64,000 bases of DNA. It comes from Chrysemys picta bellii. Lineage: Eukaryota. This document shows, one piece after another, positions 16,120 through 57,289 of this stretch (positions are counted from its first letter, which is position 1; the number at the start of each line of letters is the position of its first letter). The position numbers were made by a program, and so were the translations under genes. The DNA is taken from assembly GCF_011386835.1 (NCBI RefSeq), contig NC_088800.1, positions 20,708,001 to 20,772,000 on the forward strand, written 5' to 3'. The notes beneath the pieces were generated by a model. It ran no database searches, was not told the origin of the DNA, and worked only from the letters and a program-made list of their open reading frames with translations.

Positions 16120-16140
16120 GGAGCTGTCATTAGTGCTGAA
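16120..16140 (-). promoter_or_regulatory. Candidate RE1/NRSE (REST site)
   Basis: Minus strand TTCAGCACTAATGACAGCTCC versus consensus TTCAGCACCACGGACAGCGCC; both half-sites present at canonical spacing. Confidence 0.5.
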
Positions 16141-35500: not shown

Positions 35501-38500
35501 ATCTTGGTTCCTAATTTCATAATTCTTCAATAAACACAAACCAAACAGTCCAGCGATGAACTGTATGTATAGAACTGAAATGTGTATTTTAGGTCATTTC
35601 AGCTACACTCTGAAAGTGTCAAAATGTTATGTAAAATTTTAGGTCCTGCAAGCCTGTTGAAACAAATACAGCTTGTGAGGCGTTCTGAAGATACTGTTTT
35701 GCTCATGTAATAAGTTAAGCAAGAGGGTTCCAAATCCACCTTTTCTGCAATCTTGTAACACTTAGATATGAGAGGAATATTGCGTAATCACAACTGATGT
35801 TTTATGCAAAGACCTTTCAGTACACTATTTAAAACTCCTAAGTCTCAAGGCTTGTAATAACTAGAATGATACATCTCAGTTACAGAAGTTTTTAATAATC
35901 AGTTTCTTTATAACACCACCTTGCTGGAATTTGACAGGCATATTAGTAGAGAAGTACAACTTAACTAGACTTCCTTACTGTGATTACAATGGAACAGTGT
36001 GGCCTTTCGTTGCAAACTTTAACTTCTTATTTTGTTGCCAAATAAAACAATGTGTTCATGAAATGAGACTGTTTAAAATGAAATAATTCTTAAAATATCT
36101 TGGGAACTAGGGAGTTCTGAATGGTAGTTGCAAAGCTGATAGCATGCAAAATGTGGGATTTGCCCTATTAATGTAGAATTGTACCATTATCTCAAAGCAA
36201 AACTAATCTGTCTGCCTCTTGAAAATATAGGGATAATGATGAGGCAGCAAAGGAAGAGAAAGCACCTGTGAAGGAAAAGTATGTTCCAAAACCGAAGGCA
36301 ATTCCATCTCTTGGAAACAAGAATAGATTCCATCCCTATTCAAAGGACAAGAATTCAGGCACTGGAGAAAAGAAGACTATTAACCGTAACAGAGTTTTCA
36401 TTAGCAACATCCCATATGACATGAAATGGCAAGCTATTAAAGATCTTATGAGAGAAAAAGGTAACTTACTCCTGATAACCCACTTCATATAGGAAGGGGA
36501 GGAACTTAAAATATTTTTGTCCTTTGAGCCACACAGATTTGACTTGCTTTTTTTTTTTTTTTTTTTTTGGGCCTTTACTCGATACGTCTATCTTTTCCCC
36601 CACTCTTTCATTTGAGACAACTGCATTGCAAGGGTAGTATGGGAAAATGAAGTGTTTACAATCTTGCCATTTTAGTGTGACAGTAGAGAGCCAACAGCAT
36701 ATGCATGCCCTCATGACTTTTTAAAGAGATTGTGTTTTGTCTAGTTGTAGTCTTTGTAGATTTTTAAAGGGCTATTGTATTTAAGCAATACACTTAGTGT
36801 GTATTTCAAAAGATGTTTTGTATTTCCTTGGTGGAATCTGGCTGTGGAATTAACTTTGTCTGCATTGTCACTACTGCCATGACTGACTGTCTGGAGATCT
36901 ATATTAAAAGTGTGTTACTGCTGTTGCAGTTTTGATAGAGTAATCTGAACACCCCAAATGTTTTACTCTGGACAGTTTGGGGGAAAATAACTCTAATAAG
37001 AATTCTGTAAAAAGTTAGATGTTATTTTTCTTGAAAATATTGATTCTTTAAAAGTAATGCAAAGCACACTTGGCTTCTAGGCTGTTAAATAATGCCAAAA
37101 ACTTTTTGTAACTTTGCTTGGTGTATCTGTTGTAAGGTGACATGACTATTTGATTGGTTTTATTCACCGAAACTTTAGAAAGTGTGTGGCTTGCTGTGAA
37201 ATATTTGACTTGTAAATTTGGTTATTATATTGAAGGCAAACTCTTATGATTGAAGACATTCAGGTAGAAAGTCACCTTAAAACAGCTGTTGTGAGTAGGA
37301 TGACAAATGTCACTGAAAAGTGCTAATGTTGATGTTCTAATTTGATAGGTTAAGGGACCAAGTGTGTATCTGAATTTGTTCACCAACTATATCATACTGG
37401 CCAAAATATGATCTGTAGTATGAATTAGGTTAAATATAGTTGTTTGTATAGCTCTTGAGAATGTGGCTGCTGCATATTTCTGAAAATTAGCTAAATTATA
37501 TAGCCATTGACAGGAGGTATGTTGGTCTGGTTTTGATTGTTGGTGAATAATAGGTGCTTCTCTGTAGAGTTGTGCACAGGGGCACAGTAAAGCAAGATAT
37601 TGGTGTTTAAATGCATTGTCTCTTGGTATTTTCCCTTTGTATGTCTTATGTAGTTGGTGAGGTTACATACGTGGAGCTGTTTAAGGATGCTGAAGGAAAA
37701 TCAAGGGTAAGTGCCGTGGGCAACAATCTGCTAGAGGCTTAAAAGTTCCTCAGCAGTTTTATTTTTGTATAATACCTGTACCAGTTTTTGGAAAGTAAGT
37801 TTCATTTTTATTTTATTATGATAGACTTGAGGCTTCTGTATTAGAATCAGTCTGACACTTTCATGTAAATCAAACTAGCTGGCTGTAAGGGTCGAGTTTA
37901 TTTTATAAAAGTCAACAAATGGCATTTACTTAATTCTTCTAAGGTAATACTTTTCAGCCAACACTTTAATTTAGGATTTTTGTTGTGTTCTAGATCTGTT
38001 TTATGTAAAGGACTTTAAAAAAAACCTACTGAACTGACAAATTTTGCAAGTGTAATATTTTTATTTGAGTCCAATAAGTATAAAAATGTATAGACTATAC
38101 TGTTTGAAGAATCTAATTTGAGAGTTTACAGGACTAGTGCGCTGAACACTTTGGTTTACTGAATTTGCCTGTTTTTTAAACTGAATGGAAGGAGGTGGTT
38201 GGCAGCCAAGAGAATGCCAGCAATGAGGCACTTAGAGTGAAGAATGTTAAAGCTCCTTTGTCTTTTTTCAGTCAAAAGTTTGAACTATAATAGATCTGAA
38301 CCTGCTGTATGAACTGAGAAATGCAGGTTTGATTCTAACTAAGCAGGAATAATTGTTGTAAATGATTTCCCTAACATTTGTAAAACAAAATGGTGTGTTT
38401 TCAGTTTAGTCTCTGCATTACTGCTCACTTAAAGCAGTCCTAAACTAGTTGCTTTATTTAAATGGGTTTTGGTGCAGTCGATAATTTACTTTCATGAAAA

Positions 38501-41500
38501 GTAACTTAACTTTTTAACGTAATTCTGAAAGGTACACAAAATCCTTGTATATTGTATGTATATGGAATTTAATTTTGTACTCAAATTTTGTACTGAGTGT
38601 GCTGATCACATTCTTTTAACTGTCCTTATATCGATCTGTGTGGCATTTTTCTATAGTCCAATTCTGGTTTGGCTCAAAGAGAATAAAATGGAGTTTAGAA
38701 TATTGTCTTTTGCTTTTTAATTGTAATATCCACTGAAGTATGTTTGTTCAAAAGACACTAGGTGAAATTTAAATTTTGGCTATCAGTAAAAAGCATGTGT
38801 TTATAAATTCTGGAGTTGAAATTTAACGAACAGTTATTTAACAATAATATGGAATCTTAAAATTTACGTTTACTGACTCACTCCTTTTTTTTTTTTCCTC
38901 CCCCCCCCCTTACATGTGTTCACAAATCTTCATCATGGATGTAGGGTTGTGGGTAAGTTTTTGTTTGTGTGTGTGCGGAAAGACACTACCGTACAAAGAT
39001 TCTGCTAACTTTTTAAAATTAACTTTACTTTAATACTCTAAATATTTTGTTCCTTCTTAAGTGTGGTTGAATTCAAAGATGAAGAATTCGTAAAGAAAGC
39101 ATTAGAAACTATGAACAAATATGACCTTAGTGGAAGACCCCTGAACATTAAAGAGGTATGAATGTTACTTTGTTTTAGCTTGAATTGATTAAATCTTTTC
39201 TAGGAACACTTGAAGTGGCTTTACACTAACATTAGGTGGTCTATTAGCTATACATATCTTCTGCTTTCTATAGTGGAGAGGCCTCTTATGTTTCCTTAGA
39301 CAGCCAGGCGCCTGTTGGTCCCCTAGCATTGTGCCTTCTGTGAGCTAATGTGACAAAATCATGATGTATCCTAAAGACTGTAGTATGCCAAAATAAACAA
39401 ATGCCATTTATTTATTTTTTTATTTTTTTAAATGGTCGATACCTCCTAACTTCCTACCACTTCCCTCTTTCATCCCAGGCTATTACTTTCAGTTTTTATA
39501 CTTTTATCAAAATATGACTCTTAACTCTAGTCTGCCAGTCAGATTGTTCCGACTATTTTGTAGTGGGATGGGGGTGGAAATAGGGTGATTGTGCAAATTG
39601 AGATCTCAAATAAGTGTTAAAATTCTCAATGTAATATATAGTGTTGGGTCCTATAATAGTTCTTTGGAATGTTCTGCTACATTTTTAATCATGGAATTAA
39701 CAAATAAAATAAAGTTCATTGAATTAACTCAGTGCTTGGAAGAAGGTACTAGACTGACAGCCCATTAGATTGAAATCTTTTCTACTTGTCCATAGGCTAG
39801 GTACAGCATGTGAAGTGGCAGTGCACGCTTCCTCCACAAGTGCTTTGCCAATATGCCTCAACCCTCATCTGAAAGGACCCACCTCTAGAGGTGAGGGAAT
39901 TAGGTCTCCATGCTAATTAAGTGCTTGATCCCTCTGCTGATGCTGACAAGGATATTAGTTGATTTTGATGGATTTTTGTGGAATTTTAAAATAGTTCTCT
40001 TTTTTGTTCAACTGTCAATCCTGCTGTTGATGAATATGTTAGCTTTACTTTTAAATGTGTTCTAGGATCCTGATGGTGAACATGCTCGCAGGGCATTGCA
40101 GCGTGTGGGAGGACCATTCCCAGGAGGACATGGACCTGATATGGCACCTGGATTGATGAATTTACCCCCTTCAATTCTCAATAATCCAAACATTCCTCCT
40201 GAGATTATTAGTAATTTGCAGGCTGGCAGGCTTGGGTCCACTATTTTTGTTGCTAATGTAAGTTTAAACACATATTTAAAAATGTTAATGTCTAGTCTAT
40301 CTTAAAAAATCTTTATGTTCAGTAGTACCAATCTCTGTGAATGATACAAGAGAATCCACTCTGTCTCTTCACTTTAAAAAGAAATGCATATGAATTTTAA
40401 GGTCTGGTATTTCTTTCCTGAAACTGAAGAGAGAGTGCATGCATGAGTCCAGATTTGGGTGTAAAAACGAAATACGTTAAATGGATTTTAAGGAGCAGCA
40501 GACTACTACTAGTAGGTCTCTTTGAAGGTCTTCACTCTGCTGTAGTCCTTCCTTGCAATTTTTTAAAATAGTATTTACAGATAGGTTTATTTCCAGTAAA
40601 TAACTTTGGCTTTTCTTTACAACTGAGTGTATCTGTTGTCATGTGTATCCACCTTGTGCAGAGAATCTTGCCAGTTATTCTGCATTAACACAAACTCTAT
40701 TTTACATTATTATTTCAATGCGATCGTTTATTTTGATTTTTTACTAGCTCAGAATTTGCACAAATTTAAGAAATACTAGAACTAGTTTCTCTTTAAATGC
40801 AAACTGGTACTTAAGAGAATGCAGGTACTGCAAAAAAAATTCCCTTCCTAATCAGCATGTTAAAAGTTGAGGAGGAGGGGAGCATACAGAAGTGACATAA
40901 ATTCATCACTTTTAAAGAGATTTAACTTGTTAGACTCACTGTGGTGGACATGTGCTATAAAAATGTATTGTTTTTAGGAGTTTAAAAAGTTACTATGCTG
41001 TAAAATGTCTTCTAAATTATTTAATGAGAAGAGATAAATGTATTGGAATTGTGTAATTTTGTATATTCAGCTTGACTTTAAAGTTGGCTGGAAAAAACTA
41101 AAGGAGGTGTTCAGCATTGCTGGAACTGTAAAACGTGCAGATATCAAAGAAGACAAGGATGGCAAGAGTCGAGGAATGGGAACAGTCACTTTTGAACAAG
41201 CAATTGAAGCAGTTCAGGCAATATGTATCCTTTATTTTTTTTGAGAATTAGTTATCTGGTTAAAGGAGCAATTTGTTAAATGTGGATTCAGTTTGTGTTG
41301 AATGGTATATGAGTGTATGTGATTGATTTAAAGCTACACTATATCCATTTGCATTGTAGCTGGTTTGTGTGCATGCTAAACTTCAGTTTCTGTGTACATG
41401 AAGACCTTGAATGCACTTCACAAAACAGCTTAGGTGCCTAAACTCCAGTATTAGGCACGTAAGTCCCCATGCATGGCGCCACTGAAGTCCACGCAACTCC

Positions 41501-44500
41501 TTCTAGGTTTTAGACCTTGGGGCATGTCCAATTCTACTCTAGGCATCCAGGTGCCTAAGTCCCAGCGCAATTCATGAACCAGGGGAAGATAAGAATTCGT
41601 TGGCTTGTGTGGCTTGGGGCAGCCTCTGGGCACACGCACCAGATCAGGTCCCATTCAAAATCCAGGTGGTGTTGCTGGTGCCTACCTTATAACTGTTAGC
41701 TCAGTGGTTAGAGCACTCTGCTGGGATGTGGGAAAACCAGGTACAATTCTCATCTCTCCCACCACCTCTTTGGGAGAGAGGGTTTGAACAGAAAATGCTC
41801 TAACCCCTGAGCTATGGGATATTCTGATGTGGGGCTTCCTCAGCTTCTCTTGTTGAAGCCATTCTATAGTGGATGAATGATGAAAGAATGGAGCAGGGAG
41901 ACTGTACCAGGTTTTGCAAACTTCCGAGGTGGGTGCTCTAACCACTGGAATTCAGAAACCTTCTCTTTCTCTTGCCCAGTGACTGTTCAAATGCAGATAA
42001 ACACTTAAATAATCACGGGGCTGGAGAGAGAGGGTGACTCTGCAGTCCAGTAGTTAAGGTTGAAAAAGGAGCTGATTTGTTCAGTGATTGTCTATAACTG
42101 TCATTCTAACTAGCTGATCTTCTTGATTGGAGAAGGGGGGAGGAAACCACTAAGAAGGGTGAGGGAGGTGGGTAAGCTAAATTATAAAAATGAGTCTTTA
42201 AAACTAGTTAGGCTGCCTTCAGTATTCAGATCAAACTTCTTTGACTTGGTCTTCAGCTATGTTCAATGGACAGTTCCTGTTCGATAGACCCATGCATGTA
42301 AAAATGGTGAGTTGTCTGCCCGTTCCCTTGTACCTTAATTTTAGCTAAGCTAAAATGTAGTGAAATCTCTCCTAATAATACTCATTTCACAACAGGATGA
42401 CAAATCAATTCCTCATGAAGACTTCCGTGTGGTGGAAAACAAGACGACACAGTTACCTCGTGAGTATGGGCTATAATCTTTCTTACTCCTTGAACTTCAT
42501 ATGTTATGACGTTTGGAACTGTATTATGTCTGCACCAGAAGACATGAATGATGTTTGTAGGGTCTCATTGTGGCAACAGAAATCCTGACTCCTGATGGTG
42601 ATACTTACTGTGGTTTTCAAAGGTGGCCTTGGAGGTATTGGGATGGGACTTGGACCAGGAGGACAGCCCATCAGCGCAACCCAATTGAGCATGGGTGGTG
42701 GAATGGGGAATATGGGTCCAGGAGGTGAGGATATTTTTATTTCTTTTCTATATAATGTTAATGGTTCTTGGTCTTGCATCAGGAAAAGTTGTCTGCTCTA
42801 ACAAAGTAAACCTTGAATAGTGTGAATTTGATTAATTGACTTACATAAATTACTCCTAGGGGAATTCTGCACAATACAGTATTTGCGCAAAATTAATGTT
42901 CTGTGCAAAATTTCCTTTTAACCCCTCAGAAATGGGCTGCAGAGGTGCTGATGGCCACTTGGGGCCACTGGACCCAGCAGAGCCCAGCTTGCAAATAGAA
43001 GACACTCCAAGGGGAAGCAGGAGGGAGTTGAAGGGTTCCTGGCAGCTGCAGTTCCTGGCATGCCCTGGAGCAGGGGTGACCAACTTGAGCCTAAGAAGGA
43101 GCCAGAATTTACCAATATACATTGCCAAAGAGCCACAGTAATATGTCAGCAGCCCCCCATCAGCTCCCTCCCCCCCCCGCTCCCAATGCCTCCCATCTAC
43201 TGGCTGCCCTGCCAATTAGCACCTCCCCCTTCCTCCCGTGCACACCTGTTTTGTGGTGTGCACGAAGCTCTGGGGGTGGCGGGCACAGCAGGCTCAGGGG
43301 AGGGGAAGGGGTGGAGTGGGGGTGGGGGTGGAGGGCATGGCAGGCTCAGGGAAGGGGCCAGGAAGGGGTGGAGTGGGGGCAGAGCCAGGGGTTGAGCAGT
43401 GAGCACCCCCTGGCACATTAAAAGTTGTCGCCGGCAGCTCCAGCCCTGGAGCTGCATATTCACTTCTGAAGAGCCACATGTGGCTCTGGAGCCACAGGTT
43501 GGTCACCCCTGCCCTGGAGGAAGGAGGCGGCATGCAGGAAACTCCGTACGAGCCCTGGACCCAGCATCAGGCTGTTTCTCCCTCTGAATCCCTGGGCTCT
43601 GGGAGGATAGGGGGCATGAGTGTCTGAGGTGGAGCTGGGCCCTGGAGGGAGTGTGGGGGTGTCTGGCCCTCAGGCGGGACTCGAGGAGGGGGTCAGAGAA
43701 ACAACAAGTGGTTGTTGTAGGGGCTTCTTTAATTCCTGGGGGAATTTTTTTTTGTCTTTATTATTAGACATAATTGCTGACAGTATTTTGAAATTAATTA
43801 CCCAAATAATTGAAATTGGTGGTGTTTTGATAAAATATGCAGAATTTTAAATTTTTTTGGTGCAGAATTCCCCCAGGAATAATAATAATAGAAATGTTTC
43901 AGAGTAGAAATAGAGATCTTTTTCTGTGTTCTAAACTATATGTATAACTTTTGGTTGAAGGTATGGGAATGGATGGCCCAGGCTTTGGAGGAATGAACAG
44001 AATGGGAGGAGGTATATGTATTTTTTTATTTCTTTTCTGTTAACTTCTTTAAAATATAGTATAGAAAACATTTTTCCTTATTGCATAGGTATCGGTGGAT
44101 TTGGTGGAATGAAAGGAATGACTAACATGGGAGGATTTGGCGGAGTCAGCAGAATGGGAGGTGGGTGAACTTTCTCTCTCTCTCTCCCCCTCTACTTTTA
44201 ATCCATTATTGTTGTTAAAACTCTTGTTTTTCTTTACATAGGGATGGGGAGTGTAGATGACTTCAGAGGAAATATGGGCAGTGGAATGAGTGGGGGCATA
44301 GGAACCGGCATGGGAGGCATGGCAACTGGCATGGGAGGTAAGTTAGCAAACTTAAATGTGAGCTCTTCAGAATTGTGCTTTAAACTACTTTCCCTTTACA
44401 TGAGCAGTCATGAAATATGTAATTTATGAACATCTTATGTTGAAAATATAACAGAAAATCTATTGCAACTTGTGTTTGTTTGTTGGTATATTCTCAGCAG

Positions 44501-47500
44501 AAATGTTCCGTGGTGGAATGGGAGGAAGTATGGACAGAGATTTTGGTCGGAGTGACATGGCAATGAACCGGGGCTTTGGAGATTCGTTTGGAAGAATGGG
44601 TATGGTAATTCTGTCAAACTTGAGTTCCTCCTGAGCAATCACAATGTGTTGCAAGTACTTTATTTCTTTTGACAAGTAAACCGACTAGTAAATCTATCTA
44701 TCTGCTCTTCACCTTCAACCTCAGTCTCCAAAGAGCATTTTGGTAGGTGCTGCAATGAGGATAAAATTTAGATCTTTACATAGATGGAAGTATGGTGGCC
44801 CTGTCCAAAATAAATAAAATATATATATATATAATTTTTTTTAAATGGGGGAATGTTTAAAGAGAATATTTTAAGTTAACAGAGCTAGTAACTTTGAGTA
44901 TTTGAATAATTGAAATTCTAGGACACCTTTCTGGAAACTGCATACCAGCTGTTCAAATATTTGTCTTGCAATTTCTGTGGCCCTGTCTCATTATTGCACA
45001 CTAGACAGGTTATCCTTCCCGTTTATGTAAATTGGATAGGAGGCATCCAACAGTGAAATGTACTGTCTTTGTCTCCTCCCCTTCTTCCTTGCACAGGCCC
45101 AGTCTGCTTCCTTTCCTTTTTTGATGCAAGTCATACTCCTGGGGGAGTTCTGCACCAAAAAATTAAAAATACTGAGCACAATATTTTAAAATTCTGAAAA
45201 TTTTATTTGTCAAAATAACACTACATAATAACAGCAGTTTGTTATTTTGGTAATTTATTTCAAAATACCTGTCAGCAAGTATGTCTGTAACAATACAGAC
45301 ACAAAAATTCCCCCAGGAGTAAAGAGTTAAAGAGACCCCCATGACAACCCAGTTCCTGTTTCTCTGCCCCTTTCTCCCCTCACCCAGAGCCCAGCTGGGG
45401 GGGCCCAGACACCCACAACCCCTTCCCCCCCCTCCCCAAGCCAGCCACTGTGCTCCCCCAGCCAGTATACCCAAACCCCCTTCTCCCCCCTTGCCCAGAT
45501 CCCATGCCCTCTTCTCTCCCCTTCCCCTCCCCCCCACCCCCTCCCCAGCCCAGCCAAGCTCCCATCTCTCCCTCCCCCAGGGCATGCTGGGAACTGTAGC
45601 TGCCGGGAATCCTCTAGCTCCCTCCCCCACCCCCCGGCAGTGTCTTCTATGTGTGAGTTTGGCTCTGCTGGGTCCAGCGACCGCTAGTTGTGGCCCTCAG
45701 CACTGCAGTCCATTTCTGTGGGGGCAAGGAAATTCTGCGTGCACGTTAATTTCTGAAAAATTCTGCATTGCACAGTGGTGCAGAATGACCCCGGGGTAAA
45801 GACAGCTCAGGAGGTTGTGCTGATATTTTCTCCACTTTTAGGTCACAATGTCCTGTGCAAGGATGTTGCACGTTTTTGACTGAGCAGGTTTCATTACTCT
45901 CTTGGCTTCACTTGCTCATTTAGGACAAAAAATATTCTGCAGAAGTAGAGCCTAGGTTGACCAGAAGTGCAAGGATGAGCCTGGATCCTGACTAAATGTA
46001 GCTATTTACTTCCTTCCTTTTGTGGTGGACATGCTAAAGAGATTGACTTTCTTTTCTGTTAACTCCACCCTGCAAAGGTGAAGAATAGCATGAGGTTGAC
46101 TCATAAAACCTTCATGATATGTGGATGCCTCATTGGAAGAGGCAGAAGGGACTAGTTTAGGTTGCCACCATAAAGGCTGCTTGTAAAACAGTTTTTTCCC
46201 TGAAGGAGATTCAGGCATGATTACCAATTTTAATTAGAAAATCCCCATTTAGACAGGTGCTTAAGTCAAATTAGAGAATCATTCTTTACGCAAGTCAGTC
46301 TGGAAGCTCTGCTTCTTCCGGCCTGTGAATGGCTTCTACTCTTCATACATTCTCTGTTTGGGGTGGGGCATCTTCAAGGATTGGGTCCACATCACAGAAG
46401 ACCAGTGGGTCCTCTTGACTATCTTGAATTTCTGAGTTGCCTCCCTGTCTCACAAGATGATTCAGTCTTTTCTTCAGGGGCAGAAAAGAAGATTCTTAGC
46501 AAATCGTTTTATCATCTTTGCACAATCTGGTTAATTTGCCCCTTTCCAGAAGACATCAGATTTTCTGGTATCTGTTTTAGACTGTTTCCCATCTTTTAAG
46601 ATGGCAGGAAGTCTTTGCCCCATCTTGGATTTAAAGTGGCTGAACAGTTCCTTGGAAGTGAAGACATTCAGAATAGAATATATTTAGGGTGATAGTGGCT
46701 GCTATGTATTTGTAGACCAAATTTCTCAGTTGAAAACACAAACTTAGTTCTGACTGCAGATGTTTTACACCGGGGGTAGGCAACCTATGGCACGCGTGCC
46801 AAAGGCGGCACGCGAGATGATTTTTTCAGTGGCACTCACACTGCCCGGGTCCTGGCCACCAGTCCTGGGGACTCTGCGTTTTAATTTAATTTTAAATGAA
46901 GCTGCTTAAACATTTTGAAAACCTTATTTACTTTACATACAACAATAGTTTAGTTACATATTATAGACTTCTAGAAAGAGACCTTCTAAAAACATTAAAA
47001 TGTATTACTGGCACGCGAAACCTTAAATTAGAGTGAATAAATGAAGACTCAGCACACCACTTCTGAAAGGTTGCCGACCCCTGTTTTACACTAATACCAG
47101 ATTATTTTTTTTCCTTGTGTATTGATGATGCATCTTGGTCTTGCAGAGGCTGGTATTAAGTCTGTGCATTTTAATACTGTTGTGAGGAATTGGATGCGGG
47201 AGTTCTGCATGCAATAGACGGGAGCAGGCTTCAGCCAAGTAGAGTGCAAAACAGCAGGGCTCTGCCATATACTTGCATTCTCTGGTGCTGCTGTAACAGA
47301 ACAAGACAGTACATACTTAAAGGTGAAAGTGTCCTGGGCTGATTTGTATCTACAAAGTCTATATCCTGGCTTCCTGTGGTCATTACTGTTTAGGGAATCA
47401 CTGAGCAGGATAGCAGTGTCAGAGAATGGAAGTAATTGGAAGTTACCAGATATCTGCTTCTCTTGATTGTGTTTTGGCATTGCGTTTGTATTTAGTGACA

Positions 47501-50500
47501 ACTTGATAGAATCCCAGAGGACCTATAACTTTTTTCCTTTTGCTAGATAAACTATTACGACTTTACATCATAACTATTGGTTTATGCTGTGCTTAGCTGA
47601 GGAAGACCCTACTGTCCTCCTATCCCAATATCTAGGCTGATGCCTTCTTACTTAAGGAAAATGGGCCACTGGTGCATCGAAGAGGGGCTTCACAGCTTTA
47701 ATGTACCCAAGAGACTGTATTGGTCATTTTAAGGGGCATTGTTTGAAGTAAAAGGCTCTCCCCTCTTCCTTGCCTACAATATCAAGAAAATCTATGACTC
47801 TAGAACAAGATCTATGAGATGACTAGCTTATTTAGAAGTTTGTGTATCAAAATGGCTGTGGCCAGAGTGGAGATGTTCTTGAATCTAGGCCTCTTCGTTA
47901 ATGAGAGGCGCTTGGCAGAAGATTTCTTGCTCCTAACAAATGCTTGGAGATTAGTATTCCCTTCAGAGAATCACTTTGAGGATAAAATCTGATTGCCCAA
48001 TTAGCATGGTAGATTTCTCCAGCAATCTGAGCTCTGCTGATGTTGTTTGACGTTACTGTATCCTGCTGGGATTTAGTACCCTGGTTTCAAACTCTGCAAA
48101 CAGTTCCTTATCATAGAGGACACTTTCAATCAAAGCAATAAGTATGAACTAGTCTTTCCCCTACAGTCACAAAATGTGTTGCATTGTGATGAAACAATGA
48201 AAAGGATGCCCCTGCAGGACCCGAACGCAAGCTTTTTGGGTTTGGGGATCCGGTCTAAGCATCCATCTGACCCAAGGAAATATTGTACTTCAGAGAGAGA
48301 GAGCTTTTGATCCCCACCTGCTGGAGCGCTGAAAAGCCCAGCTTGCATTGAACAAACAGTATTCTAGCCAGAATCAGCACATTATTCTGAGGTCAGGTAA
48401 CACTGGTGTGGCAAAGGGGGAAACAAACTCTTCCTCTGAGAGACCATCGTTCTACTCAGGTTTGCAGAGAACAATCATCTTTCCGTTTGAACTGCTGAGC
48501 CAACCAGTCTGTCATCAGGTTCATTATGCAGAAAATATATCCACCCTGGGGAACAGTTTCAGAAATTGGGTATTCAGAGTGTGTGCAGTCTGGTCAAGTC
48601 AGTCACTGACTTTCTGTGGCAAAAAACACCAGACCAGATAAACAAAAAACCCAGAATGTGAAAGGTTCTCCAGCAGATAAAGTAGCATGGGCAACATGAA
48701 GTTTCAGTGTTCTTCCTTCTAGCCCATACCATGCACACTCTTGTTTCCTTTCATGTGAAGGGTAATAAAATCAAGCAAGTCAGAGCCAAGATTGTGCTGA
48801 TAGTTTTGGAGTGAGCAAGTCATCAGTTTGCGGATATACATTGGATGACATTAGAACCCCACCCATTTGTCTTCTCATATTAAGATCTATTGTCACAGTG
48901 ACACTGCCTTTGTCACAGTCTAGCAGATCTAGGTTTATCAGAGAGAGTTCTTTCTCTTCTCTTCTCCATAAAAATGGCCATACTGGGTCAGACCAATGGT
49001 CCACCTAGCTCAGTTTCCTGTCTTCCAACAGTGGCTGGTGCAGGGTGCTTCAGAGGGAATGAACACAATAGGGCAGTTTGAGTGATCTGTGCCCTATGGT
49101 CCAGTCCCAGCTATAGTCAGTCAGAGGTTTAGGGACACTCAGAGCATGGAGTTGCATCCTTGATCATCTTGGCTAATAGCCATTGATGGACCTATCCTCC
49201 ATGAATGTATCTAATTCTTTTTTAACCCATTTATACCTTTGGCCTTTACAGCACCCCCTGGCAACAAGTTCTACAGATTGACTGTGGGTTGTATGAAGTA
49301 CTTCCTTAAGTTAGTTTTAAACTTGCTACCTCTTAATTTCATTTGGTGTGACCCCAGGTTCATGTATTATGTGAAGGGGTAAATAACACTTCCTTATTCA
49401 CCTTCTCCAAACCATTCATGATTGTATAGACCTCTATCATATTCCCGTTCAGTCATCTCTTTTTCTAAGCTGACTAGTCCCAGACTTTTTAATCTCTCCT
49501 CATATGGAAGCTGTTCCATATCCCTAATCATTTTTGTTGTCCTTCTCTGTGCTTTTTCCAATTTAAAAAAAATATATATATTTTTTTGAGATGGGTGACC
49601 AGAACTGCATGCAGTATTCAAGGTGTGGGCATTCCATGGATTTATATAGTGGCAATATGATATTTTCTGTTTTCTTGTCTGACCCTTTCGTAATGGTTCC
49701 TAACACTATTAGCTTTTTTGAGTGCTGCTTCACATTGAGCAGATGTTTTCAGAGACCTGTCCACAATGACTCCAAGGTTTGTCTTGAGTGGTAACAGCTA
49801 ATTTAGAACCCATCATTTTGTATGTATAGTTGGGATTGTTTTCCAACATGCATTACTTTGCATTTATCAACATTGAATTTCATCTGCCATTTTGTTGCTC
49901 AGTCACCTAGTTTTTGTGAGATCCCTTTGTAGCGCTTCGCAGCTGTGGACTTAACTATCCTGAGTAAGTTTGTATTATCTGCAAATTTTGCCACTTCACT
50001 ATTCTCACTCTTTACCCCTTTTTCCAGATCATTTATGAATATGTTGTACAGAACTGGTCCCAGTATGGATCCTTGTGGGACCCCACTATTTACTTCTGTC
50101 CATTGTGAAAATTGACTATATATTCCTACCCTTTGTTTCCTAGCTTTTGACCAGTTAGTGATCCATGAGAGGACCTTCCCTTTTATCCCATGACTCCTTA
50201 CTTTGCTTAAGAGCCTTTGGTGAAGGACCTTATCAAAGGCTTTCTGAAAGTCCAAGTACACTATTTCCACTGGATCACCCTTGTCCACATGCTTGTTGAC
50301 ATCCTCAAAGAATTCTAATAGACTGGTGAGGTATTATTTCCCTCAACAAAAGCCTCATTGACTCTTCCCCAATATATTGTGCTCATCTGTATCTGATAAT
50401 TCAGTTCTTTACTATTATAGTTTCAACCACTTTGCCTAGTATTGAGATTTACTCCAGAAAGAAGGGCAATTTAGCTGCTTACAACAGAATCTGGACAGGG

Positions 50501-53500
50501 ACAGGAGGTATAGTGCTATGGTAACCTCTACCAAAGCCATCCCGAGGGAGTTTTAGAATGGTGGGATTAAAGTACTTTCCCCTTGCTGCCTCAGTCTTGT
50601 AGCTCTTAGGAGTTTAATGAATTTGGTGTGTCTTTTCTTCCACATCCCTAGCACTGTTCCCTGAAAGTATGTTCTCTCCTCTGACCCACTATAGGCTTCC
50701 CCAGTGGAATCTTTACTTGAGTGTTTAATAAGCAGCTGCTTTGAATTTCTTTGAATCTTTCAGGAGAGAAGCAAAAGCTTCAAGTAATTCTCCTGGTATT
50801 TGTTACATCAGTTGGGAATGGCATTCACAGAAGCCCATTCCACCCTATATTTTTCACAATAAGGTGGTCCTGTTAGCCTTGCTTTGGTGTTCTTGCAAGA
50901 TCATTTTCTGTATTCCATCTAGCTTGCCCTAATGGCAATTTGTCCGTACAAAATAATTTTTTTCCTAGAAAGGCTTTGGAAAGAATCTTAAAACCTGTAA
51001 AAAGAGCTCAAGGCTAGAGACCATCAAAGTCACTTATTATAGGCTTCCCAGCCAGCTTGCATAATAAAGTACCGATCCATCTAATCTACATAGGTGAAAC
51101 CAGTCCACAGAGAAGAATCATAAGGTAAGAATGTCTTGTGTAGTTTTAAATGTTAACCAGTGTACTTGCTAATATTGTCTGGCTTTGTTAACTTGATTTT
51201 TTTTTTTTTTCTATCCTTGTTTAGGTGGTGCAATGGTTGGTGGTTTTGCAGGAGGAATGGGAGCTTCTAGCATGGGCCCAGTAGGATCTGGAATGAGTAG
51301 GTTGATTGGGTTTCAACAGAATGTAAATGATCAATGTATAGATGTAGCAGAAGATTTTTGAAAATAATTAACTTGTTCTAGTGCAATACTTTCAGTGGCA
51401 GGAAAATATTCATGTATCAGTCCCAGGTTGTGATTGTAATTCTAATTGTTTTTGGAGGCGCTGTTTTGCTAGAGATGCTTTCCTTATATATATAGGGCCC
51501 TACTAAATTCACGGACTGTGAAATCAGGCCTCCCCGCCCAATGAAATCTAGCTATTGGGGGGGAGCGGCAGGGCTGGGAGCACCCCAACTGGGGGCTCAT
51601 ACTGTTCACTGGGCTCCAGCTGCTAGTCTGCTGGGATGGGGCTTCGTCTTCCCCTGCATGATCACTCAGAGGGGAGATCAAACCCATCTTTGGGGTACCC
51701 AGAGGTGGGTCTGATCTCTCTCTTTCCTCCCCCTCCCCAGGCCATGCAGTGGAAGAGGAAGTCCTGTCCCTCCACAGTCCGGCCCAGACTAGCAGCTAGG
51801 AGCCTCCAACTGGGGCGCTTATAGCAGTACCGGGGAGATCAGACCCACCTCCAGGAACCTTCCCTGGCTGCAGGAAGCATTATGGCAATCCTGCGACCTG
51901 CCCGCCCCCCTCATCCCCCCCCTCCTCCTCCACACACAACAGCTTTGTCTTACACACACCCTCCCTCCCCCTCCCCCCCCGATGCCCTTTTAGGTTGGGG
52001 CCCCCACGATTACAACACAGTGAAATTTCAGATGCAAACATCTGAAAGTGTGAAATTGACCAATTTAAAAACCCTCTGGCCGTGAAACTTACCAAAATGG
52101 ACCATGAATTTAGTAGGACCCTATTTATATATAAACACTGAGTTTCCTCCTCGTTCACTACATCCTTTCTAACTCTTAATCTGATGTTGGAATTTGTCAG
52201 ACTTCTTAGTTTGCTAAGTATTTTTGACGAAAGGAGCAGCATTCTGGTAAGCTTTTTGCCAGAAGAAAGATAGGGTGAGTTATTTGTAAGAATCCTACAA
52301 ACAACTCTGATTTTTCAATACTGTAACTTTTGCAGTAAGTAAAGGATGCTAGAAACCATCATTTGTGGTCTAGAATTTCAGACGTAATTCAGTTAACTTC
52401 TTTGTGTAGCGGTCTAATCTTGAACTTGTGTAAAGGCAACATTCATAGCCAGTATGACATGACATGGCATGACACCTTCACACTGGGATAGTTGAAAGAC
52501 AGTAATGCCTTGCAATTGGCTATTTTGGGTGGCACATTAGGAAATCCACCTCCTTGATACTCAAGACATGTGGATGAAGTTGAAGCTCCTGCCTTACCTG
52601 AATTTTAATTGTGGATTCATAAAATTTTCAAGAGGATATTTATCTGAGTGCCAGTAGTTTCACATGCATGACACATACTAATGTGCTTTAAAATAGCATT
52701 TGGTGTTGGAAAGTCCAGGCTTCTGATATCAAGTAGGGGCTATTAATGCCAATCCAGTTTAATATCCAAATAACCCTTTCTTTAGAAGATGATGCCATCA
52801 GGTAGGTAAAAGTGTATCTGCATTCAGGAAAACTGACATATTTTTATTTTGCCTTCCTGGATTATAATGCTCGAATCATCCATGTTCTAAAACTTCTACA
52901 AAATTTTCATTTCATCTTTTTGGTCCCCTGTATGACTTAGTGAAATTTGAAAATCATTGAACTTTCAATTCCTGTGAGGTTTGTGATGTTACTCATTGGA
53001 ATGTTTTTTTTATAGATGCAGTACTAGTCCATCAACACTTCTGTATCTGCTACTTGGTACCGATATTTTGATAATTCAGAAATGTTCAAATAAAAACATT
53101 TTAGTAACTTGCAAAGAATGTAATAACTGTGATCAGGCTAACATGCTAATATTTGAATCTGCTTGGAGCTTATAGGAAATATGACAAATTTCATTATGCT
53201 CTGTACTAGATCAGTTTTCTTACCTAAAATGACTGCATTTTCACTACACAAGAGATCTAATTAGTTAAGTTCACTTATGATACAGCTATAACTTGCATTT
53301 AAATTAATATCATGAAGTAAACTTGATTTTATTTCCTGAACATCTTTTCTTCCTCTCTCTGCCTAGGTGGTGGAATGGGTGGTATGAATAGTATGACTGG
53401 AGGAATGGGAATGGGGATGGATCGGATGAGCTCCAGTTTTGATCGAATGGGACCAGCTATGGGAGCTGGCCTGGACAGGAACATTGATATGGATCGAGGA

Positions 53501-56500
53501 TTTGTGGCTGGCCCGATGGGAAGTGGTGTGAGAGAGAGAGGTTCTAAAGGCAACCAGATATTTGTCAGAAATGTAAGCATGTGAATTCAAACAAACAGCT
53601 ATTTTTTCCACTCTGTGTCTGTATATATTATTAATACCTGTTTTCATTCTAGCTTCCATTTGACTTGACCTGGCAGAAGCTAAAAGAGAAATTCAGTCAG
53701 TGTGGTAAGTATATGGAAGGCTGCAAATGTTGTTGTCCTGCATAAGCCATAAAGTAAGAGCTTAACAAATGTCCAGTCTACAGGGACAGTGGGATGTAGT
53801 TATTGCCTAGACAAAATGTTAAATAGCCTGAAGAGTAGTCTGGCCAGCCTTATCCTGCACACATACCTTAATTTCTGGGAAAATTACTGTACTAAATTTA
53901 CCCGTGCGACTTTAGATGTGACTTACAGCTGGAGCCAAATTGTTTTTGTTCAGCTAGATGGGCCTGGTCTATGTATTCTCTGAGGGCTGTGGCTTATAAA
54001 ATAATTCTTGCTATATTGTTTGGCTTTGTGTATGGAAGAAATGCAGGATTGCTGTGGATATTTAACATAGCATTGATTTATGCGGGTACTTCGGAATGCC
54101 TTTATCGCCCTATTGCTAAAAATGCATGAATCATGGGGCTTAGATGTAAGAACAAACAACTTGTTTCCCCCTTTGAAAACTCACTTTCTGAACTCCGAAC
54201 CTAATTAGCTTTTTTTACTTTGCGGGGGGGGGGAGAGGAGGAAGAAATAATTCTCAGCATAGCACTGCCATCTGATATGTTGAATAGACAGTCAAACATT
54301 TGTGCTGTACAAATTTGATAGCTAATGTACATAGGTTTTGTCCAAGCAAATGAAGTTGCAGGTATTCCTGCTTTTGACTTCATGCAAAGATGTTCACTGC
54401 TGGGATGTTATGGGTACATCTACAAAGCAAAAAACAACACAAAAAACCTGCGGCAGTGAATCTCAGAGCCCAGGTCAACTGACTTGGGCTGGCACTACAG
54501 GGCTAAAAATAGCAGAGTAGACACTCCTGCTTCGGCTCTGAAACCTGGGGGCGGGTATGGGAACCTCAGGGCCTGGGCTCCAGCTTGAGTGGGAACATCT
54601 ATATTGCTGTTTTTAGCCCTGTAGTGCAAGCCCGAGTCAGTTGACCCAGATTTTGAGACTTACTGCTACAGAGGGTGTGTGGCGTTTTTCTCCCCCCTCC
54701 CCATGTTGATGTAACCTCTGAGACTGTGTTTATGCTACTTGGCAGGAGTGCATAAGATAGTAAACTGTTTTCCAGTCTCTTGCGGCTATTTTTGTAACTA
54801 AACTTTCTTCCTCTTGGCTATCTTCAGGTTTTACTGTTGTGCCTAGAACCAATAGAGCTCCATTGTACTTGGCATTGTACAAACATAAAACAAAAGATAG
54901 TCTCTGCCCCAAACAGTAGTAACCATTTTTTTGCAATTGCGCTAATCTTAATAGCTGCCTTCTTTCCATGAGTAACCTACGTTGCATCTTAAAATTAAAA
55001 GAATTTTGTGAACATTGGAAGAATGTGGAATTAAAATGTGGAAAAACCTTTACAAGCCATTCTGCAAATATTAGTATAAAGGAGAAGCAGGGAGGGGAAC
55101 TAAGGAGAAGTATGAAAACAGAATCTCTGTTTAAGGGTTGTCTAAATACAGTTTTTTGTACTGCTTTAGCTATATCCGTTTCTAAACCAATAATACTGGT
55201 ACAACTGCCTAGTGTAGATGCAGTTATACAGTTATAAAGGTGCTTTTACCAGAATAGTGTTTATCCATAAATTTACAGAAATAAGCTATACTGAAAAGAA
55301 TCTTTACCTGTGCCCACAGTATCCCTGTTTCTAAACAATGCAATTTCTGTTCGGATTTAACTAAATGATCCCTAGAAATGCATCTGCTTTTCTTTGACAA
55401 TCTTCACTGCAGCTAACGTAGTAATTGTTGAATGATTTTAAGAAAAGAATGATTAGTACAAATCAGAAAAATCTGTACATCATGCAAATATCATTAAGGG
55501 ACTACAAAGAATATCTGTCTCTAAATGTTTCATCTCTTTCTGTGAAAAGTCAGTCTTATATTGTGAGTGTCTCAAAAATGAGGCCTACATTTTAGAGAGG
55601 TTTGCCTACTTTTGGTGGCTTGGCTGTATTAGCATGGTGTAGCTAAAAGGATAGCTCATTATGAAATGTCTACCTTAAAACACCTAGTTAATGACTAGTT
55701 TTCTGTCTTGAGTGCTTTTTTAAATCTTGCGTCTTCTAAAGAAGTGTATTGAGGATAAAGGAATGTCCATTCATGAGAAGTCATCTAATTCTTATTTCAG
55801 TAATCACTCCAGTAACAGAACTTCCACTCCATTTGATCTGTACTATGATTGTTTTACTGTAACATGCACCTAGTAAGTAATCACCATGTGATTGCTAGCA
55901 TCTTTAAACTGCCTGATAGCTCAAATTGTGGCTGAAAGGGGCTCAAAACTGGTCTTATTCTGATAGGATTCTTCTGTTTGTGCAACTGAGCTCAACTAAT
56001 TCAAGCAAAAGCATGTTTAATTCTATACTGGTATGAGACCAGAACTGTTGCTATTTGTGTAGACCAAGGAGTTTTCATACTCTGATTCTTGTCTGCTGTA
56101 TTGATACTTATGTTTCCTTTCAATAAGTAAACGCTACCTGAATGTATTGGAATAGCAACTCTTATGTTTTAACTTATTTTTTTTATTAAAATGTAATTGA
56201 CACCTCAGATTGACCCAAAGATTCAGTCTGCTGTAAGATGGATGCAAACTTTATACTTGGTTAGTCCATTTGATGGTAGTATGTTTTTAGATTGTATTTT
56301 AACATCTAAACTTAGATGCTTCCTAAAAAAAATTTTTTAAATGTCTTTCTACCTTAATCTGTCATTGGATCTCTAACTTGGTAGTGCAATGTAGCCTTTA
56401 TAGTAACTGCTGTTTAACTTATTTATTCAGGTCATGTAATGTTTGCTGAAATAAAAATGGAGAATGGAAAATCAAAAGGCTGTGGAACAGTCAGGTTTGA

Positions 56501-56594
56501 CTCACCAGAATCTGCTGAAAAAGCCTGTAGAATAATGAACGGCATAAAAATCAATGGCAGAGAAATTGATGTACGCTTGGATCGCAATGCATAA
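32047..56594 (+). CDS. MYEF2: Myelin expression factor 2 (three RRMs, Gly/Met-rich linker; hnRNP M paralogue), 18 coding exons, 1908 nt / 635 aa
   Basis: Exons joined by hand with GT-AG ends and consistent phase: 32047-32195, 36231-36460, 37654-37706, 38945-38952, 39062-39155, 40066-40257, 41071-41224, 42257-42306, 42396-42459, 42623-42724, 43961-44011, 44089-44160, 44242-44337, 44501-44599, 51225-51296, 53367-53572, 53653-53704, 56431-56594. Peptides [73 protein letters not shown]...IDVRLDRNA* match MYEF2. Confidence 0.97.
36231..36460 (+). CDS. MYEF2: MYEF2 exon 2 (PY-NLS, RRM1 RNP2)
   Basis: tag|G GAT AAT...GAA AAA G|gtaact; encodes KNRFHPY and RVFISNIPY. Confidence 0.96.
37654..37706 (+). 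CDS. MYEF2: MYEF2 exon 3
   Basis: [18 protein letters not shown]; tag| and |gtaagt. Confidence 0.95.
38945..38952 (+). CDS. MYEF2: MYEF2 exon 4, 8-nt microexon GGTTGTGG
   Basis: gtag|GGTTGTGG|gtaagt; required to restore frame and the RGCGVVEF RNP1. Confidence 0.93.
39062..39155 (+). CDS. MYEF2: MYEF2 exon 5
   Basis: [31 protein letters not shown]. Confidence 0.95.
40066..40257 (+). CDS. MYEF2: MYEF2 exon 6
   Basis: [13 protein letters not shown]...[10 protein letters not shown]. Confidence 0.96.
41071..41224 (+). CDS. MYEF2: MYEF2 exon 7 (RRM2)
   Basis: [14 protein letters not shown]...AIEAVQAI; followed by the U12-type donor GTATCCTTT. Confidence 0.96.
41225..42256 (+). other. MYEF2: U12-type (minor spliceosome) GT-AG intron
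   Basis: 5' end GTATCCTTT; branch site TTCTTTGAC at 42237-42245, 11 nt before the 3' end; little polypyrimidine tract. Confidence 0.88.
42257..42306 (+). CDS. MYEF2: MYEF2 exon 8
   Basis: [17 protein letters not shown]. Confidence 0.95.
42396..42459 (+). CDS. MYEF2: MYEF2 exon 9
   Basis: [21 protein letters not shown]. Confidence 0.92.
42623..42724 (+). CDS. MYEF2: MYEF2 exon 10
   Basis: [34 protein letters not shown]. Confidence 0.94.
42853..43879 (-). mobile_element. TA-flanked MITE (Tc1/mariner-like termini), copy 1
   Basis: TA|CTCCTAGGGGAATTCTGCAC ... GTGCAGAATTCCCCCAGGAA|TA; carries a nested hAT MITE. Strand is relative to copy 2. Confidence 0.8.
43071..43511. mobile_element. hAT-Charlie-like MITE nested in the TA-flanked MITE
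   Basis: TIRs CAGGGGTGACCAAC / GTTGGTCACCCCTG; perfect TSD CCCTGGAG (43063-43070 and 43512-43519). Confidence 0.9.
43961..44011 (+). CDS. MYEF2: MYEF2 exon 11
   Basis: [17 protein letters not shown]; 51 nt, phase 1-1. Confidence 0.92.
44089..44160 (+). CDS. MYEF2: MYEF2 exon 12
   Basis: [24 protein letters not shown]; 72 nt, phase 1-1. Confidence 0.9.
44242..44337 (+). CDS. MYEF2: MYEF2 exon 13 (probable cassette)
   Basis: tttacatag|GG ATG GGG AGT...GGA G|gtaagt; [32 protein letters not shown]; 96 nt, phase 1-1. Confidence 0.85.
44501..44599 (+). CDS. MYEF2: MYEF2 exon 14 (NAGNAG acceptor)
   Basis: [33 protein letters not shown]; ctcagcag acceptor; 99 nt, phase 1-1. Confidence 0.92.
45136..45796 (+). 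mobile_element. TA-flanked MITE, copy 2, inverted relative to copy 1
   Basis: TA|CTCCTGGGGGAGTTCTGCACC ... GGTGCAGAATGACCCCGGGG|TA; internal segments are reverse complements of copy 1. Confidence 0.8.
46771..47083. mobile_element. hAT-Charlie-like MITE
   Basis: Termini CGGGGGTAGGCAACC / GGTTGCCGACCCCTG; perfect TSD TTTTACAC (46763-46770 and 47084-47091). Confidence 0.9.
47600..48700 (+). mobile_element. Possible highly decayed DIRS-type retroelement (RNase H region)
   Basis: The ORF at 48348 contains [12 protein letters not shown], resembling the DIRS RNase H motif HVLVRSDNTT. Boundaries are guesses. Confidence 0.25.
48967..50445 (-). mobile_element. 5'-truncated CR1 LINE with decayed RT, antisense in MYEF2 intron 14
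   Basis: Minus ORFs with [76 protein letters not shown]; the CR1 3' UTR lies at the low-coordinate end. Confidence 0.92.
51225..51296 (+). CDS. MYEF2: MYEF2 exon 15
   Basis: [24 protein letters not shown]; 72 nt, phase 1-1. Confidence 0.9.
51493..52123. mobile_element. hAT MITE with TAGGG termini
   Basis: TIRs TAGGGCCCTACTAAATTCACGG / CCATGAATTTAGTAGGACCCTA; TSD TATATATA / TTTATATA (7/8). Confidence 0.85.
53367..53572 (+). CDS. MYEF2: MYEF2 exon 16
   Basis: [12 protein letters not shown]...[12 protein letters not shown]. Confidence 0.95.
53653..53704 (+). CDS. MYEF2: MYEF2 exon 17
   Basis: [17 protein letters not shown]. Confidence 0.95.
54412..54716. mobile_element. Fold-back Harbinger-like MITE in the last MYEF2 intron
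   Basis: Termini GGGTACATCTACA / TGTTGATGTAACC; long internal inverted arms. Confidence 0.75.
56431..56594 (+). CDS. MYEF2: MYEF2 exon 18 (RRM3, stop)
   Basis: [57 protein letters not shown]. Confidence 0.97.
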
Positions 56595-56924
56595 TTTAAA
56601 ACTGTGTTCAGGAACATTCCTATGTCTGTTTAGCTTCTATATCCTAGTAAGTCATTTTTAGTAACATTGTATGCTTACAAAAGCGGTAAAAACAAACTTT
56701 TAAATCCCACCAGCCTTTAACAGTATAGTGTTTAATATACTGTGATTCTTGGTAACTAAATCTTACTATGTTTGGTTTTTAAGGACAGTTTGCCCGATTT
56801 TCAGAGGTACTAAACACCTGCAGTCCCCTTAAAGACAGCGGAAGCTGTGGATGCTTGGCACCTCTGGAAAATTAGGCCAAGTGTCTCTAGTCATTCAGTT
56901 TAAATGAATGGTTATACTGTTTTT

Positions 56925-56930
56925 AATAAA
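56925..56930 (+). terminator. Probable MYEF2 polyadenylation signal
   Basis: AATAAA about 330 nt after the stop, with T/GT-rich sequence downstream. Confidence 0.55.
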
Positions 56931-57215
56931 ATAAGCCATTTTCTCTGTTCTCAAGATTGCATAGTGGGATTTGTTTAGTGTTTCAGATTCCTTCAGCTCG
57001 TATCAACATTGTAATGTAAAAAATTAGATGTCCCTTCCAGAATTTTGGTTTTATATATGCATTGTAGTCACACTGTAATTCTTGACTCTAAAAAAAAAAA
57101 AAAAAAGGGCTCCAATTAGGCTGTGATGTTGTTTTATTTTTAAGATTACTTTTATGCCATGATTTAGAGCTTCTGTAAATAAGTTTTAGAGCCCAAAGGG
57201 AGTTTTGGATTTTTT

Positions 57216-57221
57216 TTTATT
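57216..57221 (-). terminator. Candidate SLC24A5 polyadenylation signal (a second at 57133-57138)
   Basis: Plus-strand TTTATT = minus-strand AATAAA, about 70 nt after the SLC24A5 stop. Confidence 0.45.
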
Positions 57222-57289
57222 TGACTAAATGAAGAAATTGATCCTCTCTCATTGTTTTGTGTCTTCCTCAGTACAGTCACTGGCTAAAA

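What the first reader, a model, noticed from the sequence alone, without database searches (positions are those of the whole stretch)
42853..45796. Inverted MITE pair brackets MYEF2 exons 11-14: predicted circRNA with a stop-less Gly/Met ORF, or in-frame loop-out skipping
Seen: two copies of one TA-flanked MITE family in opposite orientation, 81 nt upstream of exon 11 and 536 nt downstream of exon 14. For example, 42968-42984 is the exact reverse complement of 45661-45677, and 43774-43793 pairs with 45258-45278. The enclosed exons are 51+72+96+99 = 318 nt, all phase 1-1. Back-splicing exon 14 to exon 11 gives ATG G|GT ATG with no stop in that frame and many ATGs. Known: inverted intronic repeats such as Alu pairs promote back-splicing and exon skipping, and circles of 3n length without stops can support rolling-circle translation. 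Inference: a lineage-specific, transposon-created switch that could delete 106 aa of the low-complexity linker from MYEF2 and release a circle encoding a (G/M-rich)n polymer. Copy divergence (roughly three-quarters identity by eye) and the hAT nested in copy 1 may weaken pairing.
Basis: partly seen in the sequence, partly recalled or inferred. Interest (0 to 1): 0.75.

Follow-up and report, generated by a model that had tools for sequence, protein, structure and literature searches.

The report
Inverted transposon pair around MYEF2 exons
Two old copies of one small DNA transposon lie in opposite orientation in the introns on either side of four Gly/Met-coding MYEF2 exons and could pair in the pre-mRNA, but RNA contigs from three related species show only normal linear splicing, so this is an ordinary candidate circular-RNA site and not a demonstrated switch.

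Summary
The sequence observation holds. Two TA-flanked, non-coding copies of one DNA-transposon family (42853-43879 and 45136-45796) lie in opposite orientation around four 3n, phase 1-1 exons of a MYEF2 gene. Copy 1 carries a nested 441-bp hAT element with a perfect 8-bp target duplication. The copies are about 72-79% alike.

Folding predicts a strong inter-intron duplex (ddG -141 and -94 kcal/mol, against about -11 for shuffles). The minimum-energy fold of the 3.1-kb stretch pairs the copies through 459 base pairs. It is the only inverted repeat found inside the transcription unit.

RNA contigs from three organisms show the linear junctions 10>11, 11>12 and 13>14, and one run shows 14>15. 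The main acceptor of the last exon is 44498, not 44501. That exon is therefore 102 nt and the circle 321 nt, with 318 nt as the minor NAGNAG form. No back-splice, no 10>15 skip and no RNA-only A>G change appears among the rows shown. Contig data cannot exclude rare forms.

The stop-free frame follows automatically from joining symmetric coding exons. Both families are high-copy, and the insertions are shared by four closely related organisms.

Verdict: real architecture, known kind, functional claim untested.

The parts
42623..42724 (+).
   Evidence: The joint 42724>43961 is seen in three RNA runs. The loose end before 42623 equals the end of the preceding exon. Frame.
42853..43879 (-). Transposon copy 1 (TA-flanked, non-coding), in opposite orientation to copy 2, interrupted by the nested hAT
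   Evidence: Terminal repeats at 42853 and 43860. Matches to copy 2. No Pfam domain. High-copy family in the DNA run X15.
43071..43511 (.). Nested non-autonomous hAT element inside copy 1
   Evidence: 17-nt terminal repeats with 1 mismatch. Perfect 8-bp target duplication CCCTGGAG at 43063-43070 and 43512-43519. Summed contig depth in X15 is about 16,000 times the single-copy level.
43961..44011 (+). Bracketed exon 1 of 4, 51 nt, phase 1-1
   Evidence: AG..GT. Joints 42724>43961 and 44011>44089 are seen in X1, X6 and X13.
44089..44160 (+). Bracketed exon 2 of 4, 72 nt, phase 1-1
   Evidence: AG..GT. The joint 44011>44089 is seen in three RNA runs. Record lengths in table 8 account for 51+72 nt between the neighbouring exons.
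44242..44337 (+). Bracketed exon 3 of 4, 96 nt, phase 1-1
   Evidence: AG..GT. Contig pieces cover 44240-44335/7 in three RNA runs.
44498..44599 (+). Bracketed exon 4 of 4, 102 nt from the main acceptor at 44498. A minor NAGNAG acceptor at 44501 gives 99 nt.
   Evidence: The joint 44337>44498 is seen in X1, X6 and X13. The joint 44337>44501 is seen in X13 only, at depth 127.8 against 366.3.
45136..45796 (+). Transposon copy 2 (TA-flanked, non-coding). Its first ~188 nt (45134-45321) form a short terminal-repeat-bounded sub-element that is much more abundant in the genome than the rest.
   Evidence: Terminal repeat at 45136. Inner and outer inverted terminal repeats are I15 and I21. Depth bins in X15. 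No Pfam domain.
51225..51296 (+).
   Evidence: Sequence. The loose end behind 44601 in X13 reads on into this exon, which shows the linear 44599>51225 junction.

Best explanation
These are two independent, old insertions of a high-copy, non-autonomous, TA-targeting DNA transposon. They sit in the introns on either side of four small Gly/Met-coding exons of MYEF2. One copy was later hit by a hAT element.

Both copies are transcribed as intron sequence and removed with the introns. The dominant mRNA includes all four exons in linear order.

The two copies can in principle pair in the pre-mRNA and loop out the exons. A low-level circular RNA of 321 or 318 nt, or an occasional in-frame skip, is therefore a plausible by-product, as at any locus with complementary flanking introns. 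Nothing shows that this happens, that it is regulated, or that the circle is translated.

Shown here: the repeat anatomy, the gene model, the linear junctions and the predicted duplex. Inferred: neutrality, and at most minor circle output.
For: - Anatomy of the repeats.
- No coding capacity in either copy.
- High copy number: the DNA run X15 has single-copy depth of about 23. Summed contig depth is 12,000-21,000 on the long-element bins, 269,000 on the short sub-element and 376,000 on the hAT. Chance pairs of such elements are therefore expected.
- The junction contigs of both copies and of the hAT are present in organisms A, B, C and D, which differ by 0-2% (table 8). The insertions are therefore shared and old.
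- Spliced contigs in X1, X6 and X13 join 42724>43961, 44011>44089 and 44337>44498. X13 runs on from 44599 into the exon at 51225.
- Low-depth unique contigs (3-8 against 83 on exons) cover the copies with 0 differences in X1. That is intron-level transcription without consensus-level editing.
- The internal introns are only 77, 81 and 160 nt, and the upstream intron is 1236 nt. This favours fast linear splicing (inference).
Against: - The preconditions for back-splicing are unusually good. The duplex ddG is -141 and -94 kcal/mol against about -11 +/- 3 for shuffles.
- The minimum-energy fold of 42725-45850 has 459 copy1-copy2 base pairs.
- This is the only inverted pair inside the transcription unit, so it has no competing partner.
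- The arms lie 81 and 537 nt from the splice sites.
- A circMYEF2 is reported in cattle (PMC8985345).
- The read evidence is contig-level only. Library types are not on record, and 112 joints and 797 loose ends were not shown.
Confidence: 0.7

Rival explanations
1. The pair works. Base pairing of the two copies in the pre-mRNA brings the donor at 44599 next to the acceptor at 43961. This gives a detectable circular RNA of 321/318 nt and/or an mRNA that lacks 106-107 residues of the Gly/Met linker.
For: - A strong predicted duplex, which is also the global minimum-energy fold.
- It is the sole complementary pair in the gene.
- The geometry is close to the splice sites.
- Complementary flanking sequences promote both back-splicing and skipping (PMC8330042).
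- A circMYEF2 exists in cattle (PMC8985345).
Against: - No back-joint or skip appears among the best-supported joints and loose ends in three RNA runs, while every linear junction is seen at depth 83-366.
- No RNA-only A>G change appears at the arms. The A>G rows of table 3 also stand in the DNA run and come from other copies.
- The short upstream and internal introns favour linear splicing first (inference).
Confidence: 0.22
2. The circle exists and is translated round and round from its stop-free frame into a Gly/Met-rich polymer.
For: The 318- and 321-nt circles have no stop in the native frame and 20 in-frame ATG codons per turn. Stop-free circular frames are reported to be translated in human cells (10.1101/473207).
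Against: The circle itself is not shown. The open frame follows automatically from symmetric coding exons. Such frames are common among circular RNAs: the ratio of stopped to stop-free frames is about 3.4 (10.1101/473207). No initiation element was tested.
Confidence: 0.02
3. The paired copies act mainly as a long double-stranded RNA in the intron, either as a substrate for adenosine deamination or as a source of small RNAs, without any effect on exon choice.
For: A long duplex is predicted. Both copies are present in intron-level RNA contigs.
Against: The unique contigs over the arms in X1 (42928-43112 and 45606-45794) have 0 differences from the DNA. Contigs would hide partial editing.
Confidence: 0.06

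Closest known systems
Inverted Alu (or other repeat) pairs in the introns flanking circular-RNA exons of mammals; complementary flanking matches in C. elegans zip-2 (PMC8330042)
   Same: Complementary sequences lie in the two flanking introns close to canonical splice sites, and they are predicted to loop out the exons. The same architecture is known to promote both back-splicing and skipping.
   Different: Here the repeats are DNA-transposon relics, not SINEs. They are about 72-79% alike. The flanking introns are short (1.2 and 6.6 kb). No back-splice or skip product has been seen.
TA-target miniature inverted-repeat elements (Tc1/mariner-derived, Stowaway-like) and non-autonomous hAT elements
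   Same: Both have terminal inverted repeats, no coding capacity and very high copy number. The outer element has a TA target duplication and the nested one has an 8-bp duplication.
   Different: The outer element is a 660-bp composite that carries a third, inner terminal repeat and a G/C-rich core. The superfamily rests on the TA flanks alone, because no autonomous partner was identified.
Circular RNAs with stop-free (rolling-circle) reading frames, e.g. circPSAP, circPFAS, circABHD12 (10.1101/473207)
   Same: The length is 3n, there is no stop in the host frame, and there are many in-frame ATG codons.
   Different: Those circles and their junction peptides were observed. This one is only a prediction.
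circMYEF2 of cattle (Bta_circ_0001547, PMC8985345)
   Same: It is a circular RNA from the orthologous host gene.
   Different: It spans 4.8 kb of cattle DNA. Its exons could not be compared here, and it says nothing about these transposon copies.

Membership tests
Circular-RNA locus driven by complementary flanking introns | Reverse-complementary sequences in the upstream and downstream flanking introns | tested here: met
Circular-RNA locus driven by complementary flanking introns | Reads or contigs across the back-splice junction (44599>43961) | tested here: inconclusive
   None is among the 15 best-supported joints in three RNA runs. These are contigs only, and 112 joints were not shown.
Circular-RNA locus driven by complementary flanking introns | Circle output depends on the repeats | not testable with these tools
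   This needs a minigene or a genome deletion.
Non-autonomous TA-target DNA transposon (MITE-like) | Terminal inverted repeats and a TA target duplication | tested here: met
   TA lies at 42851-52 and 43880-81, and at 45134-35 and 45797-98.
Non-autonomous TA-target DNA transposon (MITE-like) | No transposase; many copies in the genome | tested here: met
   No Pfam domain. Summed depth in the DNA run is hundreds to thousands of times the single-copy level. That tool warns that depth is not an exact copy number.
hAT non-autonomous element | 8-bp target duplication and matching terminal repeats | tested here: met
MYEF2 (hnRNP M paralogue) | hnRNP M-type RRM domains with a Gly/Met-rich linker | tested here: met
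   The last RRM matches human hnRNP M chains 2dgv and 2dh9 at E 4e-26. RRM_1 hits. Linker exons.
MYEF2 (hnRNP M paralogue) | Lies between SLC12A1/CTXN2 and SLC24A5, as in human | tested here: met
   An AA_permease_N exon lies at 3-350(-). Na_Ca_ex exons lie at 57293-58315(-). Human gene order is from PMC3196690. The neighbours are identified to family level only.
MYEF2 (hnRNP M paralogue) | Best named protein matches are MYEF2 orthologues | not tested
   The word search only sees proteins of a length similar to single exons.
Circular RNA with rolling-circle reading frame | 3n length, no stop, in-frame ATG | tested here: met
   (in silico only).
Circular RNA with rolling-circle reading frame | Junction-spanning footprints or peptides | not testable with these tools
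   No such data were available.

The most novel reading that the evidence does not exclude
In this reptile-like lineage, the transposon pair makes MYEF2 release a 321-nt circle in brain or testis. The circle is translated round and round into a Gly/Met-rich polymer, while the host mRNA loses 107 residues of its low-complexity linker.
Probability: 0.02. Interest if true: 0.65.

Novelty: new member of a known kind. Interest (0 to 1): 0.18.

Why it matters
If the pair did drive back-splicing, it would be a clean example outside mammals of DNA-transposon relics creating a circular RNA and a shortened isoform. The host gene would be a splicing-factor paralogue whose relative, HNRNPM, itself controls circular-RNA formation (PMC8346284). 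The locus would also be a convenient minigene, because it has one complementary pair and small exons. As it stands, it is one more intronic inverted-repeat pair of a high-copy family. Its main value is as a well-defined candidate for a simple RT-PCR test.

Tried and rejected
- I looked for other copies of either element in the 64-kb window that might compete for pairing. There are none.
- I considered the 510-nt inverted pair 24799-25284 x 49016-49520 as a competitor. I rejected it because its left arm lies upstream of the MYEF2 start near 32 kb.
- I considered the 'opposite strands' joints in RNA (42987/45657 and 43580/45303) as signs of pairing or template switching. I rejected this because they sit at repeat-level depths and fit other genomic copies of the family.
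- I considered the A>G rows of table 3 as editing. I rejected this because the same changes stand in the DNA run at multi-copy depth.
- I considered a composite transposon carrying the exons. I rejected this because the exons are in frame between the neighbouring MYEF2 exons and are spliced into the mRNA.
- Rfam finds nothing in the window.
- The earlier-findings look-ups gave nothing beyond this same note.
- I did not use the word-based protein search or the large profile search. Single exons cannot retrieve full-length proteins, and gene identity was settled by domains and synteny.
- The joined (spliced or back-spliced) sequence was sent to no search tool. Frames were computed locally only.
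Full report
**What is in the sequence**

The stretch 42853-45796 holds two copies of one non-coding element in opposite orientation.
- The repeat finder gives inverted arms of 154 nt (76%), 78 nt (72%) and 36 nt (86%).
- blastn gives two collinear blocks, 42872-43075 x 45570-45770 (74.9% over 207 columns, E 5e-32) and 43690-43869 x 45168-45370 (71.8% over 206, E 3e-22). It finds no other copy in the 64-kb window.
- The 20-nt terminal repeat occurs only at 42853(+), 43860(-) and 45136(+), against 0.01 expected by chance.
- Each copy is flanked by TA, and the outer flanks differ between the copies, so these are independent insertions.
- Each copy also carries a third, inner terminal repeat (43732-43746 and 45306-45321). 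The last ~150-190 nt on one side therefore form a short sub-element.
- Copy 1 is interrupted at 43071-43511 by a 441-bp element with 17-nt terminal repeats and a perfect 8-bp duplication CCCTGGAG. This is the signature of a hAT insertion.
- With the hAT removed, copy 1 and the reverse complement of copy 2 are 78.7% identical over aligned bases and 63.7% when gaps are counted. The longest exact run is 17 nt.
- None of the long stop-free stretches in the copies matches a Pfam family.

**The gene**

The + strand carries an hnRNP M-type gene.
- RRM pieces lie at 36223-36489, 41038-41241 and 56418-56591.
- The last RRM matches human hnRNP M chains 2dgv and 2dh9 at E 4e-26.
- On the minus strand at the left edge there is an exon with the AA_permease_N domain typical of SLC12A cotransporters.
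- Convergent on the right are Na_Ca_ex exons.
- The human order SLC24A5-MYEF2-CTXN2-SLC12A1 (PMC3196690) fits, so MYEF2 is the right name.
- The coding start lies near 32.0 kb and the stop at 56592-56594.
- By my count the bracketed exons are coding exons 10-13 of 17, not 11-14. An untranslated first exon would reconcile the two counts. I could not check this.

**The exons and the frame**

All four exons have AG..GT borders and are phase 1-1.

The RNA contigs, however, use 44498 in all three RNA runs. Only X13 also shows 44501, at depth 127.8 against 366.3. The main form of the last exon is therefore 102 nt, the circle would be 321 nt, and 107 residues would be removed by a skip.
- The 321-nt form is also stop-free, with 20 Met and 40 Gly codons per turn.
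- The neighbouring exons (42623-42724 and 51225-51296) are also 3n and phase 1-1.
- Any subset of these exons therefore keeps the frame. The 'stop-less ORF' follows from symmetric coding exons and is not a special feature.
- In human data, stop-free circular frames make up roughly a quarter of circular reading frames (ratio 3.4, 10.1101/473207).

**Can the copies pair?**

Yes, on thermodynamic grounds.
- Co-folding arm A gives -276.9 kcal/mol. That is 141 kcal/mol below the two self-folds, against 11.6 +/- 3.0 for dinucleotide shuffles.
- Arm B gives 94 kcal/mol below the self-folds, against 10.0 +/- 3.6.
- The minimum-energy fold of the whole 42725-45850 stretch has 459 base pairs between the copies, against 139 and 24 within them.
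- A self-comparison of the window finds no other inverted pair inside the transcription unit. The 510-nt pair 24799-25284 x 49016-49520 has its left arm upstream of the promoter.
- These folds ignore co-transcriptional kinetics. The internal introns are 77, 81 and 160 nt and the upstream intron is 1236 nt, which should favour linear splicing before copy 2 is made. That last point is inference.

**RNA and DNA evidence**

The one run search returned runs with coded ids and no library type on record. I laid X1 (organism A), X6 (B), X13 (C) and X15 (D) on 42500-46000.

X1, X6 and X13 are RNA.
- Single contigs join 42724>43961, 44011>44089 and 44337>44498 at depth 83-366.
- The record lengths account for the 51+72 nt of the two small exons.
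- In X13 the letters behind 44601 read on into the exon at 51225.
- No back-joint 44599>43961 and no loose end at 42724 leading to 51225 is among the rows shown.
- 112 joints and 797 loose ends were not shown, and contigs drop rare forms. The result is therefore 'not detected', not 'absent'.
- Low-depth unique contigs (3-8) cover both arms in X1 with 0 differences.
- The A>G rows of table 3 also stand in the DNA run at multi-copy depth, so they are other copies of the family and not editing.

X15 behaves as DNA, with an even depth of about 23 over exons and introns.
- Its summed depth is about 12,000-21,000 on the long-element bins, 269,000 on the short sub-element and 376,000 on the hAT.
- Both families are therefore very abundant. 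The tool warns that this is not an exact copy number.
- Contigs across the ends of copy 2 in organism B, and across the copy 1/hAT border in organism C, show that the insertions are shared by organisms that differ by 0-2%.
- No organism lacking an insertion was available for comparison.

**Reading**

The architecture is that of a locus with complementary flanking introns. [quoted passage not shown]

Here the preconditions are good and the locus is a fair candidate. What is shown is only the normal linear mRNA.

With high-copy families, such pairs are expected by chance. Nothing points to a regulated switch or to translation. I put 0.70 on 'ordinary intronic pair, at most a minor by-product circle', 0.22 on a detectable circle and/or skip, 0.06 on a mainly double-stranded-RNA role and 0.02 on rolling-circle translation.

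**Limits**

Frames were computed locally.
- The species and the transposon family names remain unknown to me.

Noticed in passing
window 44495-44501: There is a tandem CAGCAG (NAGNAG) acceptor. 44498 is used in all three RNA runs. 44501 is used as well in X13, at depth 127.8 against 366.3. The difference is one Ala residue.
   Followed up: partly
window 44527: In X13 (organism C), one contig lacks 3 letters inside the last bracketed exon, at depth 166.6 of 1610.5. It could be an allele, a paralogous read or an alignment variant of the NAGNAG form.
   Followed up: no
window 42623-51296: All six consecutive Gly/Met-linker exons (102, 51, 72, 96, 102/99 and 72 nt) are 3n and phase 1-1. This pattern would fit growth of the linker by exon duplication.
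   Followed up: no
window 49397-50333 (-): A LINE reverse-transcriptase fragment (RVT_1, E 4e-15) lies in the long downstream intron. Related pieces lie at 24799-25284 (inverted, upstream of the MYEF2 promoter) and at 59731-59967.
   Followed up: partly
window 8300-9350 and 17090-17470: G-rich, GC-skewed repetitive blocks are about 69% alike as direct repeats. They resemble the G-rich core of the nested hAT and of the transposon copies.
   Followed up: no
window 56592-57293: The MYEF2 stop codon and the last coding exon of the convergent Na/Ca-exchanger gene (SLC24A5-like) are only about 700 nt apart, so their 3' untranslated regions probably overlap.
   Followed up: no
window 3-350 (-): The first coding exon of an SLC12A-type cotransporter (AA_permease_N) lies at the left edge. 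It is transcribed away from MYEF2, which fits the human gene order.
   Followed up: partly
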